Shown: in pieces, positions 30,619 through 31,113 of the stretch
Layout: each line of letters opens with the position of its first letter
How positions within the stretch are numbered: the first letter of the stretch is position 1
Origin: Octopus bimaculoides
Lineage: Eukaryota
Assembly: GCF_001194135.2 (NCBI RefSeq)
Contig: NC_068983.1
Coordinates: forward strand, 56,521,284 to 56,572,799
Reading direction: 5' to 3'
Length of the DNA stretch: 51,516 nucleotides
Made by a program: the position numbers and the translations under genes
The notes under the pieces: generated by a model
Databases searched by the model: none
Told to the model about the DNA's origin: nothing
What the model saw: the letters and a program-made list of their open reading frames with translations, nothing else

Positions 30619-31113
30619 AAAAAATTAGAAATGATACATTTCTAAATCTTTCAGAGAGATTTAAGCAATAGTGATACGATAAAGTAGTTGTATACTACCA
30701 ATTTTACGTGACAGTCCCAAGAAGGGAATCATAGTACTGCTATTTAGCCCTAGGAAGCTGCACAGCTTCTTGTCGGCCTTGAATCTCTCTGAGAGATTTA
30801 GAAATGTATCATTTCTAATTTTTGTAATCAGTGAATGTGATTCACTAGAATTATTAAATGCTTACGAGAGCTAGACAGGCATCTTCAGCCAGCAAGTCAT
30901 GCTACTCCAGGCTGATGATGAGCTAAAACTCAGAAACATGTCCCTGGATGCAGGCTTGGCTAGGTGGAGGTGCTTGTCTCCCCCTCGTAAACATAAGGAC
31001 ACAGGAAATGTGTCAAGGCCGACAGGAAGTGGTGCAGCTTTCTAGGGCTAAATATCAGTAGTATGGTTCTCGTATTGGGACTGTCTCGTTAAGTTGACAG
31101 TATACAAGTATTT
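30619..31113 (+). mobile_element. Foldback insertion with central intact hammerhead (element 2, 495 bp, 7-bp TSD TAACTAC)
   Basis: TAACTAC at 30612-30618 and 31114-31120, and the mariner sequence resumes across it. Inverted repeats 30616-30665/30778-30826 and about 30681-30782/31013-31113. Inner hairpin 30862-30990. Confidence 0.85.
30906..30948 (+). ncRNA. Type I hammerhead ribozyme (minimal helix III)
   Basis: UCCAGG-CUGAUGA-UGAG(CUAAAA)CUCA-GAAAC-AU-GUC^-CCUGGA. All core nucleotides are canonical, stem I has 6 bp and stem II 4 bp, helix III is the palindrome ACAUGU, and predicted cleavage is after C30942. Confidence 0.88.

What the first reader, a model, noticed from the sequence alone, without database searches (positions are those of the whole stretch)
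30619..31113. Mobile ~500-bp foldback element with an intact hammerhead ribozyme at the tip of a long hairpin, inserted into a mariner with a 7-bp TSD
Seen: TAACTAC flanks both ends (30612-30618, 31114-31120) and the mariner 3' region is continuous if the insert is removed, so this is a discrete insertion younger than the mariner. It has no ORF and its ends are not inverted copies of each other, so it is not a MITE. Its core is an imperfect ~55-bp stem (30862-30911 / 30943-30990) closed by a canonical type I hammerhead: CUGAUGA, stem II UGAG/CUCA, GAAAC-AU-GUC^. There is an internal loop (UAC opposite U) 6 bp up stem I. Established: minimal type I hammerheads with palindromic helix III occur in Penelope-like element pLTRs and non-LTR retrozymes, and stem I internal loops dock with loop 2. 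Inference: a non-autonomous retroelement whose RNA is self-processed and mobilised in trans, possibly by a Penelope RT. I cannot place this architecture in a named family.
Basis: partly seen in the sequence, partly recalled or inferred. Interest (0 to 1): 0.88.

Follow-up and report, generated by a model that had tools for sequence, protein, structure and literature searches.

The report
Hammerhead-ribozyme retroelement copy inside a mariner
A 495-base non-coding mobile element carrying one classic animal-type hammerhead ribozyme at the tip of a long hairpin has jumped into an old mariner transposon; it is real, but it looks like a single-unit copy of the already described 'retrozyme' kind rather than something new.

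Summary
TAACTAC flanks a 495-bp insert (30619-31113). Three independent intact copies of the same mariner, from another organism, carry that heptamer once and align without a gap when the insert and one repeat are removed.

The insert has no coding capacity and no terminal inverted repeats. It carries a complete type-I hammerhead at 30897-30955, with the cut after C30942. This is not the 'minimal' Penelope variant. It is the canonical metazoan layout: 6-bp helix I, a UAC/U internal loop, 4-bp helix II, a 6-nt loop 2 and a palindromic helix III. Rfam type-I hammerheads recovered from metagenomes share this layout.

With these, 30680-31113 forms one 80%-paired rod.

I read it as a monomer copy of a non-LTR retrozyme-like retroelement, presumably moved in trans by a Penelope-like element. 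That part is inferred. No second copy could be reached in any collection, so family boundaries, copy number and cleavage are untested.

Hammerhead-bearing repeats in other animal DNA show the same plan: dispersed monomers with the ribozyme mid-element and flanks that are partly self-complementary.

Verdict: new member of a known kind, of modest interest.

The parts
30612..30618 (+). Left copy of the 7-bp target-site duplication TAACTAC
   Evidence: The heptamer is present once, as GTAGTT(T) in mariner sense, in three uninterrupted mariner copies.
30619..31113 (+). The 495-bp insert: a non-coding hammerhead-bearing element, 40% G+C
   Evidence: The window has about 502 bp where L010-L012 have 4 bp. 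There is no other copy in the window. RNA fold is -238 kcal/mol, z = -20.
30620..30665 (+). Module A: an inverted copy (96%) of A', made of two small palindromes. It lies at the 5' edge of the insert, followed by a 14-nt linker (30666-30679).
   Evidence: Inverted repeat I2; alignment. Its position is unexplained (see report).
30680..30782 (+). Arm B: the outer 5' arm of the rod
   Evidence: Inverted repeat I1, 103 nt, 83% complementary to 31013-31115.
30778..30823 (+). Module A': two local hairpins forming a side branch of the rod
30862..30911 (+). 5' arm of the inner hairpin, which is extended helix I of the ribozyme
   Evidence: About 75% complementary to 30943-30990.
30897..30955 (+). Type-I hammerhead ribozyme. 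UAC loop 30903-05; helix I 30906-11 / 30943-48; core CUGAUGA 30912-18; helix II 30919-22 / 30929-32; loop 2 30923-28; GAA 30933-35; palindromic helix III ACAUGU 30936-41; C17 30942; predicted cut between 30942 and 30943.
   Evidence: Descriptor scan; Rfam HH9, 29.7 bits, E = 3e-6 on 86 nt; model R1, 51.7 bits, the only hit in the window; layout shared with Rfam-positive hammerheads.
30943..30990 (+). 3' arm of the inner hairpin
31013..31113 (+). Arm B': the outer 3' arm of the rod, which ends at the right edge of the insert (the repeat as reported runs 2 nt on into the target duplication, to 31115)
31114..31120 (+). Right copy of the target-site duplication TAACTAC
30556..32350 (-). Host element: a degraded mariner with frameshifts and stops. 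The 3' inverted repeat TTGGGTTGAGGAATAATTCATG starts at 30556. The stop codon is at about 31128. The 5' end is eroded and placed only approximately, at about 32350.
   Evidence: Pfam HTH_48 and Transposase_1; 87% nucleotide identity to intact copies L010-L012; the 5' end is not alignable.

Best explanation
The insert is one genomic copy of a non-coding, non-autonomous retroelement of the hammerhead-bearing kind described in animals as non-LTR retrozymes, which are themselves thought to derive from Penelope-like elements.

Its RNA (+ strand) folds into a long, imperfect, branched rod. The canonical metazoan type-I hammerhead sits at the apex, so helix I continues into the rod. Helix III is only a 6-nt palindrome (ACAUGU). 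Efficient cutting after C30942 therefore needs two ribozymes to pair, either in a tandem transcript or between two RNAs.

A copy made by reverse transcription was integrated into AT-rich DNA in the 3' UTR of an old mariner, duplicating 7 bp. With a single ribozyme this copy can be cut at most once and cannot release a unit-length or circular RNA. It is most likely a dead-end monomer offspring of an active array elsewhere in the genome.

Shown: the discrete insertion with a target duplication; the absence of coding capacity and of terminal inverted repeats; a complete ribozyme motif of the canonical class; and the rod-like predicted fold.

Inferred: the RNA intermediate, mobilisation by a Penelope-like reverse transcriptase/endonuclease, dimer-dependent cleavage, and inactivity of this copy.
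For: Insertion and 7-bp duplication.

Ribozyme: all core positions and three helices are present, with one hit per window against 0.005 expected. Rfam HH9 aligns it, including the UAC loop and loop 2. It has the same 13-part layout as 10 hammerheads from metagenomic eukaryotic DNA; of the eight of those loci rescanned against Rfam, six reach the RF00163 gathering score. Helices I and II of those relatives covary (98% of cells paired, 10 of 14 pairs changed on both sides). A model built without the window sequence hits only 30897-30955 (51.7 bits).

Fold: 30680-31113 is 80% paired with z = -19, and the + strand folds 35 kcal/mol better than the - strand.

No ORF homologues, no tRNA-like head, no terminal inverted repeats and no tandem repeat.

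Analogues: two unrelated families (L013/22/25/32/37 and L014/20/23/30/33) are dispersed monomers of about 220-270 bp. They share a 3' end, vary at the 5' end, have the ribozyme mid-element, and their flanks are partly self-complementary.

Literature: the canonical type-I design and dimeric helix III (PMC4209133); retrozymes of 170-400 nt, low G+C, highly self-paired, with target duplications longer than 4 bp (PMC7229834); monomer copies and Penelope pLTR ancestry (bioRxiv 10.64898/2026.07.22.740005); an AT-rich target for a Penelope-like element (PMC11167929).
Against: No second copy of this element was found anywhere. That it is a repeat family, and that it has a 5'-truncation series typical of retroposition, are therefore unproven.

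There is no tandem unit at this locus, and tandem organisation is the defining arrangement of retrozymes.

The ribozyme falls below Rfam gathering scores (29.7 against 52 for HH9; the type-I model scored lower still). It has U10.1-A11.1 where relatives have G-C. Its dimer helix III is weak (-4.6 against about -10 to -11 kcal/mol). It may cleave poorly or not at all.

No Penelope-like ORF was seen among the 18 longer ORFs scanned in the window.

The 61-nt 5' segment (module A plus linker) is not accounted for by a simple rod.

The model R1 score is partly circular, because the relatives were fished with a pattern taken from this ribozyme.
Confidence: 0.6

Rival explanations
1. It is a Penelope-type compound insertion rather than a native foldback. 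In this reading 30619-30782 is an inverted, 5'-truncated partial copy (B' plus a 60-nt 3' 'tail') placed head-to-head with a direct copy (30778-31113). Both would be reverse-transcribed from a tandem or circular template of about 350 nt (A'-L1-hairpin-L2-B'-linker). The B/B' 'stem' is then a by-product of integration and only the inner 129-nt hairpin is native RNA structure. The template could be a retrozyme array or the pLTR region of an autonomous Penelope-like element.
For: The module order A-linker-B-A'-L1-H-L2-B' equals rc(B'-linker'-A') followed by A'-L1-H-L2-B'. The right arm ends exactly at the insert's edge, while the left arm starts 61 nt inside it.

Penelope-like insertions often carry an inverted 5'-truncated copy at the 5' end, and a 30-40-bp tail at one end only (PMC8557442). 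A purified Penelope-like protein cuts and extends both target strands and starts reverse transcription at two internal sites (PMC11167929).

The implied 350-nt unit matches retrozyme sizes (PMC7229834). Head-to-head partial copies occur in the analogue loci L037 and L020. B/B' mismatches look neutral: 13 transitions, 11 transversions, and no strong G-U bias.
Against: If both pairs arose at integration they should be equally diverged. A/A' is 96% identical and B/B' is 83% (Fisher p = 0.036).

The 350-nt unit alone is only 66% paired (z = -5), and B' alone is unstructured (z = -0.5). With B included the figures are 80% paired and z = -19. The tail would be 60 nt rather than 30-40. No tandem array is available to check any of this.
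Confidence: 0.25
2. It is a SINE-like element in the manner of Schistosoma Sm-alpha: transcribed by RNA polymerase III and copied by a LINE, with the hammerhead as passenger.
For: It is short and non-coding, has a variable-type 7-bp duplication in AT-rich DNA, and carries a Schistosoma-like hammerhead layout (own knowledge of Sm-alpha). A LINE-type reverse transcriptase fragment lies in the window at 23.6-24.3 kb.
Against: There is no tRNA, 5S or 7SL-like head. There is no poly(A) or simple-repeat 3' tail on either strand. Box A and box B promoter elements were not searched for.
Confidence: 0.07
3. It is a DNA-level foldback or MITE-like transposon, or a product of replication template switching, that happens to contain a hammerhead-like sequence.
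For: There are nested inverted repeats and a short duplication of defined length. Stem mismatches show only a weak preference for G-U on the + strand: 17 against 9.
Against: The two termini are not inverted copies of each other, and the left arm starts 61 nt inside the insert. The ribozyme is complete, including peripheral contact positions that a random palindrome would not supply. The + strand folds 35 kcal/mol better than the - strand.
Confidence: 0.05
4. It is a chance match to the hammerhead consensus in an otherwise unrelated insertion.
For: It scores below Rfam gathering thresholds. In a gigabase-scale genome a relaxed descriptor would give on the order of 100 chance hits, extrapolating.
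Against: The actual match exceeds the relaxed descriptor: helices of 6, 4 and 3 bp, the UAC/U loop at the canonical distance, a 6-nt A-rich loop 2, a palindromic helix III, and about 65 further base pairs enclosing the ribozyme.
Confidence: 0.02

Closest known systems
Metazoan non-LTR retrozymes (Cervera & de la Pena 2020, PMC7229834; Li et al. 2026 preprint 10.64898/2026.07.22.740005)
   Same: Canonical type-I hammerhead. Non-coding, low G+C (40%), with no LTR, primer-binding site or polypurine tract. Highly self-paired predicted RNA with the ribozyme in the rod. Target duplication longer than 4 bp. Size within the reported 51-972 bp range. Dispersed monomer copies are described.
   Different: Only one unit with one ribozyme at this locus, and no tandem array in the window. 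At 495 bp it is above the usual 170-400 nt. The rod is unusually long: 71 pairs enclose the core, against 7-44 in 28 comparison hammerheads. It also has an extra inverted 5' module. Circular RNA is not testable here.
Hammerheads in the pseudo-LTRs of Penelope-like elements (Cervera & de la Pena 2014, PMC4209133; Craig et al. 2021, PMC8557442; Frangieh et al. 2024, PMC11167929)
   Same: Type-I topology, a palindromic helix III implying dimeric action, an AT-rich target, and inverted partial copies with a one-sided tail as an insertion signature.
   Different: [quoted passage not shown] Here the design is canonical. There is no RT/GIY-YIG ORF in or next to the insert. Similarity to any pLTR could not be tested.
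Schistosoma Sm-alpha hammerhead repeats and the amniote intronic hammerhead HH9 (Rfam RF02275)
   Same: The ribozyme layout matches: 6-bp helix I, a UAC internal loop opposite a single U, 4-bp helix II and an A-rich 6-nt loop 2. HH9 is the best Rfam match.
   Different: The score of 29.7 bits is below the gathering score of 52. Helix III is a bare 6-nt palindrome rather than a closed stem-loop. HH9 is a conserved single-copy intronic motif, not a mobile element. The Sm-alpha comparison rests on my own knowledge and was not tested here.
Plant LTR retrozymes (PMC4918200)
   Same: A non-autonomous retroelement with hammerheads and a structured RNA.
   Different: The plant elements have type-III ribozymes in two direct LTRs, a primer-binding site and polypurine tract, 4-bp duplications and G+C above 55%. 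None of these is present here.

Membership tests
Hammerhead ribozyme, type I (canonical metazoan design) | Catalytic core C3-U4-G5-A6-N7-G8-A9, G12-A13-A14, the A15.1-U16.1 pair, and H17 at the cleavage site | tested here: met
   CUGAUGA 30912-18, GAA 30933-35, A30936/U30941, C30942.
Hammerhead ribozyme, type I (canonical metazoan design) | Three helices around the core, with helix I open-ended and helices II and III closed | tested here: met
   Helix I 6/6 and helix II 4/4 standard pairs. Helix III is 2 bp plus a 2-nt loop in cis, or a 6-bp palindrome in trans, as in 'most metazoan HHRs' (PMC4209133).
Hammerhead ribozyme, type I (canonical metazoan design) | Peripheral contact positions: an internal loop (UAC opposite U) after 6 bp of helix I, and a 6-nt A-rich loop 2 | tested here: met
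   These align to the corresponding HH9 positions and to 10 metagenomic hammerheads. Loop 2 is CUAAAA where they have CAAAAA.
Hammerhead ribozyme, type I (canonical metazoan design) | G10.1-C11.1 closing pair of helix II | tested here: not met
   It is U-A here and G-C in 8 of 10 relatives. U-A still pairs and differs from G-C on both sides.
Hammerhead ribozyme, type I (canonical metazoan design) | Rfam gathering score (RF00163 34 bits; RF02275 52 bits) | tested here: not met
   No hit at gathering score. The best is HH9 at 29.7 bits on an 86-nt search, and one lower-scoring model of the same clan, presumably RF00163, was left out of that table. Six of the eight relatives rescanned pass RF00163.
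Hammerhead ribozyme, type I (canonical metazoan design) | Site-specific self-cleavage | not testable with these tools
   Needs in vitro transcription of monomer and dimer constructs.
Non-LTR retrozyme | Carries a type-I hammerhead, is non-coding, and has no LTR, primer-binding site or polypurine tract | tested here: met
   There are no direct terminal repeats.
Non-LTR retrozyme | Tandem repeat organisation, so that two cuts release a unit | tested here: not met
   One unit and one ribozyme at this locus, with no tandem repeat. Monomer derivatives are, however, part of described families (preprint 10.64898/2026.07.22.740005).
Non-LTR retrozyme | Small unit, low G+C, target duplication longer than 4 bp when present | tested here: met
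   495 bp (or about 350-434 bp, depending on the model), 40% G+C, 7-bp duplication.
Non-LTR retrozyme | Highly self-paired RNA | tested here: met
   76-80% paired, z = -16 to -20. This is a prediction only.
Non-LTR retrozyme | Expressed as linear and circular unit-length RNA | not testable with these tools
   No transcriptome of the source organism is available.
Penelope-like element (autonomous, or a fragment of one) | RT plus GIY-YIG ORF, or sequence homology to a pLTR/ORF of such an element | tested here: inconclusive
   There is no ORF in the insert. Pfam scans of 18 selected ORFs in the window gave no GIY-YIG hit; the only reverse-transcriptase hit (RVT_1, with DUF6451 on the adjacent fragment, at 23.6-24.3 kb) I read as LINE-type. 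Repbase and Dfam are not available.
MITE / terminal-inverted-repeat DNA transposon | Terminal inverted repeats at both ends of the insert | tested here: not met
   The left terminus 30619-30640 has no inverted match at the right terminus. Arm B starts 61 nt inside the insert.
SINE | A pol III head derived from tRNA, 5S or 7SL, and an A-rich or LINE-derived 3' tail | tested here: not met
   ARAGORN found nothing. Rfam found no tRNA, 5S or 7SL match. The 3' end reads ...CAAGTATTT.

The most novel reading that the evidence does not exclude
The odd module order (an inverted B' plus a 60-nt tail that repeats the element's own 5' module, placed head-to-head with a nearly full unit) may be the footprint of a Penelope-type double-strand-primed integration from a circular or tandem retrozyme RNA of about 350 nt. 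If so, this locus would be direct structural evidence, flanked by a target duplication and backed by an empty site, that animal retrozymes are integrated by the Penelope machinery. So far that is argued only from co-occurrence and pLTR similarity.
Probability: 0.15. Interest if true: 0.55.

Novelty: new member of a known kind. Interest (0 to 1): 0.3.

Why it matters
Hammerhead ribozymes are abundant in animal genomes, and most are now attributed to retrozymes and Penelope-like elements. Clean examples of a single integration event, with both a target duplication and an independent empty site, are still useful, because the integration mechanism of animal retrozymes is inferred rather than shown.

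This locus gives such an example. Its inverted 5' module offers a testable prediction about how the copy was made. If the source is a mollusc or cephalopod, it would add a lineage for which I found no hammerhead-element description in the searchable literature.

Otherwise it is an ordinary repeat copy with no sign of host function.

Tried and rejected
1. Looking for other copies:
- BLASTN of the insert against the window found only itself.
- An exact look-up of its 48-aa ORF found nothing.
- Protein-space searches with three pseudo-ORFs (56, 63 and 66 aa) found nothing.
- Exact-pattern scans with the ribozyme (25 fixed bases) in metagenomes and in bacterial/archaeal genomes found nothing.
- A scan with a block conserved between B and B' found nothing in viral contigs or genomes.
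- BLASTN against 49 kb around three related mariners found only the mariner.
These collections apparently do not hold the source genome.

2. Nine viral-contig hits to a loose core pattern have no helices and were discarded as chance.

3. Identifying the organism: exact look-ups of two window ORFs were not on record. The cephalopod guess stays untested.

4. Rfam at default settings misses the ribozyme.

5. MAFFT misaligned the window's shorter helix III, so pair counts that include it were made on a manual register.

6. My first placement of the mariner 5' end at 32474 was not supported by alignment. The 5' end is eroded and lies near 32350.

7. G-U versus A-C asymmetry in the stems (17 against 9) and the ratio of transitions to transversions do not discriminate a native rod from an integration-time inverted duplication.

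8. Nested-MITE and inversion scenarios for module A were considered and dropped, because none reproduces the observed module order without extra assumptions.

9. One literature search timed out.

Full report
OBSERVATION

The region reads as the first-stage reader described. TAACTAC occurs at 30612-30618 and 31114-31120, flanking 495 bp. The insert lies on the + strand inside a degraded mariner encoded on the - strand. Pfam finds HTH_48 and Transposase_1 on the conceptual translation. The mariner stop codon is near 31128, and its 3' inverted repeat (TTGGGTTGAGGAATAATTCATG) starts at 30556.

A protein search with the mariner found intact relatives in one ENA assembly, ERZ25073822. Three independent copies (L010, L011, L012) are 87% identical at the DNA level. 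Where the window has about 502 extra bases, they have 4. With the insert and one heptamer removed, the window's 3' UTR aligns to all three without a gap at the insertion site, and each carries GTAGTT(T) once. The discrete insertion and the 7-bp target duplication are therefore established by independent empty sites.

Those loci share nothing else with the window, so they probably come from a different organism. The window's own source was not identified.

ANATOMY OF THE INSERT

- G+C is 40%.
- There is no tandem repeat and no second copy in the window.
- The longest ORFs are 48 aa from an ATG and 66 aa from stop to stop. None has a relative among billions of predicted proteins.
- There is no tRNA-like sequence.

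A (30620-30665) pairs with A' (30778-30823): 46 nt, 96%. B (30680-30782) pairs with B' (31013-31115): 103 nt, 83%.

The order of modules is A, a 14-nt linker, B, A', L1, the hairpin with the ribozyme, L2, B'. As RNA the whole insert folds at -238 kcal/mol (z about -20). The segment 30680-31113 alone is 80% paired (z = -19). The + strand folds 35 kcal/mol better than the - strand. The two termini of the insert are not inverted copies of each other, so it is not a MITE.

THE RIBOZYME

Every core position of a hammerhead is present, and the helices are intact:
- CUGAUGA, 30912-18
- helix II UGAG/CUCA, with loop CUAAAA
- GAA, 30933-35
- A15.1 through U16.1 as ACAUGU, 30936-41
- C17 at 30942
- helix I UCCAGG/CCUGGA

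A structural descriptor finds this one site in the window, against 0.005 expected per simulated window.

Rfam does not report it at gathering score or in a 1-kb E-value scan. When only 86 nt are searched, the best family is Hammerhead_HH9 (29.7 bits, E = 3e-6, gathering score 52). That alignment places the UAC internal loop, the single opposing U and loop 2 on the corresponding consensus positions.

To see the class in context I scanned metagenome contigs with TAC-N6-CUGAUGA-N4-CNAAAA-N4-GAAAC. This returned 27 loci. Most are hammerheads with the same 13-part layout, in this order:
- outer stem
- UAC
- 6-bp helix I
- core
- 4-bp helix II
- CAAAAA
- GAAAC with a palindromic helix III
- GUC
- 6 bp
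- U
- outer stem

Six of eight re-scanned loci reach the RF00163 gathering score. Their helices covary strongly: 98% of cells are paired and 10 of 14 pairs change on both sides.

A covariance model built from nine of them, without the window sequence, hits the window once, at 30897-30955 (51.7 bits). This score is partly circular, because the search pattern came from the window's ribozyme. The independent parts are the helices, the GUC, the opposing U and the outer stem.

According to PMC4209133, 'most metazoan HHRs' have exactly this design: helix I of 6 bp, helix II of 4 bp, and helix III of 1-2 bp with a 2-4-nt palindromic loop. That paper distinguishes it from the 'minimal' variants of Penelope-like elements.

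This ribozyme differs from its relatives in three ways:
- U10.1-A11.1 in place of G-C
- U at the second position of loop 2
- a shorter palindrome, whose intermolecular helix III is worth -4.6 kcal/mol against -10 to -11 for relatives

It may be a weak or decayed ribozyme. Activity cannot be judged here.

RELATED ELEMENTS ELSEWHERE

No copy of this element could be reached (see the field on what was tried). The metagenomic hammerheads, however, fall into repeat families that serve as analogues.

Family 1 (L013, L022, L025, L032, L037) and family 2 (L014, L020, L023, L030, L033) are dispersed single units of about 220-270 bp. They have a common 3' end and variable 5' ends, the ribozyme lies mid-element, and the upstream and downstream flanks are partly complementary to each other. 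The plan 'hammerhead at the apex of an imperfect hairpin in a short dispersed repeat' is therefore not peculiar to this window.

The window's rod is the most extensive of those compared: 71 pairs enclose the core, against 7-44. Two analogue loci (L037, L020) show head-to-head inverted partial copies.

HOW IT MOST LIKELY WORKS

The best-supported reading is a non-autonomous retroelement of the non-LTR retrozyme kind. PMC7229834 describes those as 170-400 nt, of low G+C, with no LTR, primer-binding site or polypurine tract, with target duplications longer than 4 bp, and as highly self-paired RNAs. The 2026 preprint 10.64898/2026.07.22.740005 reports family consensus lengths of 51-972 bp, widely varying proportions of dispersed monomers, and descent from Penelope pLTRs.

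The palindromic helix III means that efficient cleavage needs two ribozymes (PMC4209133). A single-unit copy can be cut at most once, so it cannot yield a unit-length circle. This copy is probably a dead end.

The target is AT-rich, in line with the preference measured for a Penelope-like enzyme (PMC11167929). The RNA intermediate, the mobilising enzyme and cleavage itself are all inferred.

THE UNEXPLAINED 5' MODULE, AND TWO MODELS

Model 1: the native RNA is the rod B...B', and A plus the linker is a 5' leader.

Model 2: the insert is a Penelope-style compound, an inverted 5'-truncated copy (B' plus a 60-nt tail ending in an A'-like sequence) placed head-to-head with a direct copy A'...B'. 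This implies a tandem or circular template of about 350 nt. It fits published Penelope signatures: an inverted 5'-truncated copy at the 5' end, a tail at one end only, and both target strands primed (PMC8557442, PMC11167929).

Two results count against model 2. A/A' is significantly less diverged than B/B' (p = 0.036). The 350-nt unit is only 66% paired, and B' alone is unstructured.

Nothing decisive counts against model 1, except that it does not explain A. Mismatch types do not discriminate between the models. Only other genomic copies can decide.

COMPARISON, NOVELTY, VERDICT

The ribozyme is a member of the canonical metazoan type-I class, with two soft failures: the 10.1-11.1 pair and the Rfam thresholds.

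The element works like, and most probably is, a monomer derivative of a non-LTR retrozyme. Tandem organisation, the defining feature of that family, was tested and is not met at this locus, and circular RNA is untestable. I therefore file it as 'retrozyme-like monomer' rather than as a proven member.

It is not a MITE, not a SINE by the usual criteria, and not a plant-type LTR retrozyme.

It is a new member of a known kind. The most novel reading still open is that the module order records a Penelope-type double-primed integration from a circular retrozyme RNA. I give that a probability of about 0.15; it would be moderately interesting if true.

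Noticed in passing
window 30556-~32350 (-); L010 2981-4269, L011, L012: The host mariner is 87% identical in DNA to a family with intact 348-399-aa transposase ORFs. 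That family is present in at least 33 near-identical protein variants on long, high-coverage contigs of a single ENA assembly (ERZ25073822). Those contigs share no other repeat with the window. Either it is a recently active mariner in another organism, or there was horizontal transfer.
   Followed up: partly
window 1408-1573, 10015-10090, 38888-39075, 41430-41889, 42358-42583, 46942-47231, 47302-47577: A repeat of about 180 bp, 71-88% identical between copies, occurs at least eight times in the window, partly in adjacent or inverted pairs. It was not classified. It is probably a high-copy SINE-like family of the source genome and could help identify the organism.
   Followed up: partly
L018, L021, L026, L035, L039 (metagenome contigs, about 50% G+C): Canonical type-I hammerheads that pass Rfam RF00163 (L018, L021, L026; L035 and L039 gave no hit at gathering score) sit on 1.0-2.5-kb contigs whose ends or internal segments repeat at 0.9-1.4-kb spacing, at up to 100% identity. 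They may be tandem arrays or circular molecules of about 1 kb. No second ribozyme family was found at gathering score. The sequences were not printed or assembled.
   Followed up: partly
L027 1881-1950, L036 999-1070 (rc): Two metagenome contigs carry a hammerhead that matches the printed amniote HH9 consensus over helix I, the core, helix II and loop 2. This is probably vertebrate DNA in environmental samples.
   Followed up: no
window 30885-30970 compared with the whole window: A point of method. Rfam's filters drop this hammerhead in whole-window and 1-kb scans. The same site scores 29.7 bits when 86 nt are searched. Short-helix-III hammerheads will be under-reported by routine Rfam annotation.
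   Followed up: yes
window 23611-24302 (-): A reverse-transcriptase fragment (RVT_1, weak, with DUF6451 on the adjacent fragment) that I read as LINE-type. Nothing Penelope-like (GIY-YIG) was seen among the 18 selected ORFs scanned.
   Followed up: partly
L037 1347-1518; L020 1722-2024: In two analogue hammerhead families, one locus each shows a head-to-head inverted partial copy next to the ribozyme-bearing copy. In L037 this puts the hammerhead in the loop of a near-perfect 85-bp inverted repeat, whereas sister copies have only about 65-70% complementary flanks.
   Followed up: partly
window 13593-13820 (+): A short ORF that resembles the C-terminal end of a Tc1-type transposase by eye. Pfam gave no hit for it.
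   Followed up: no
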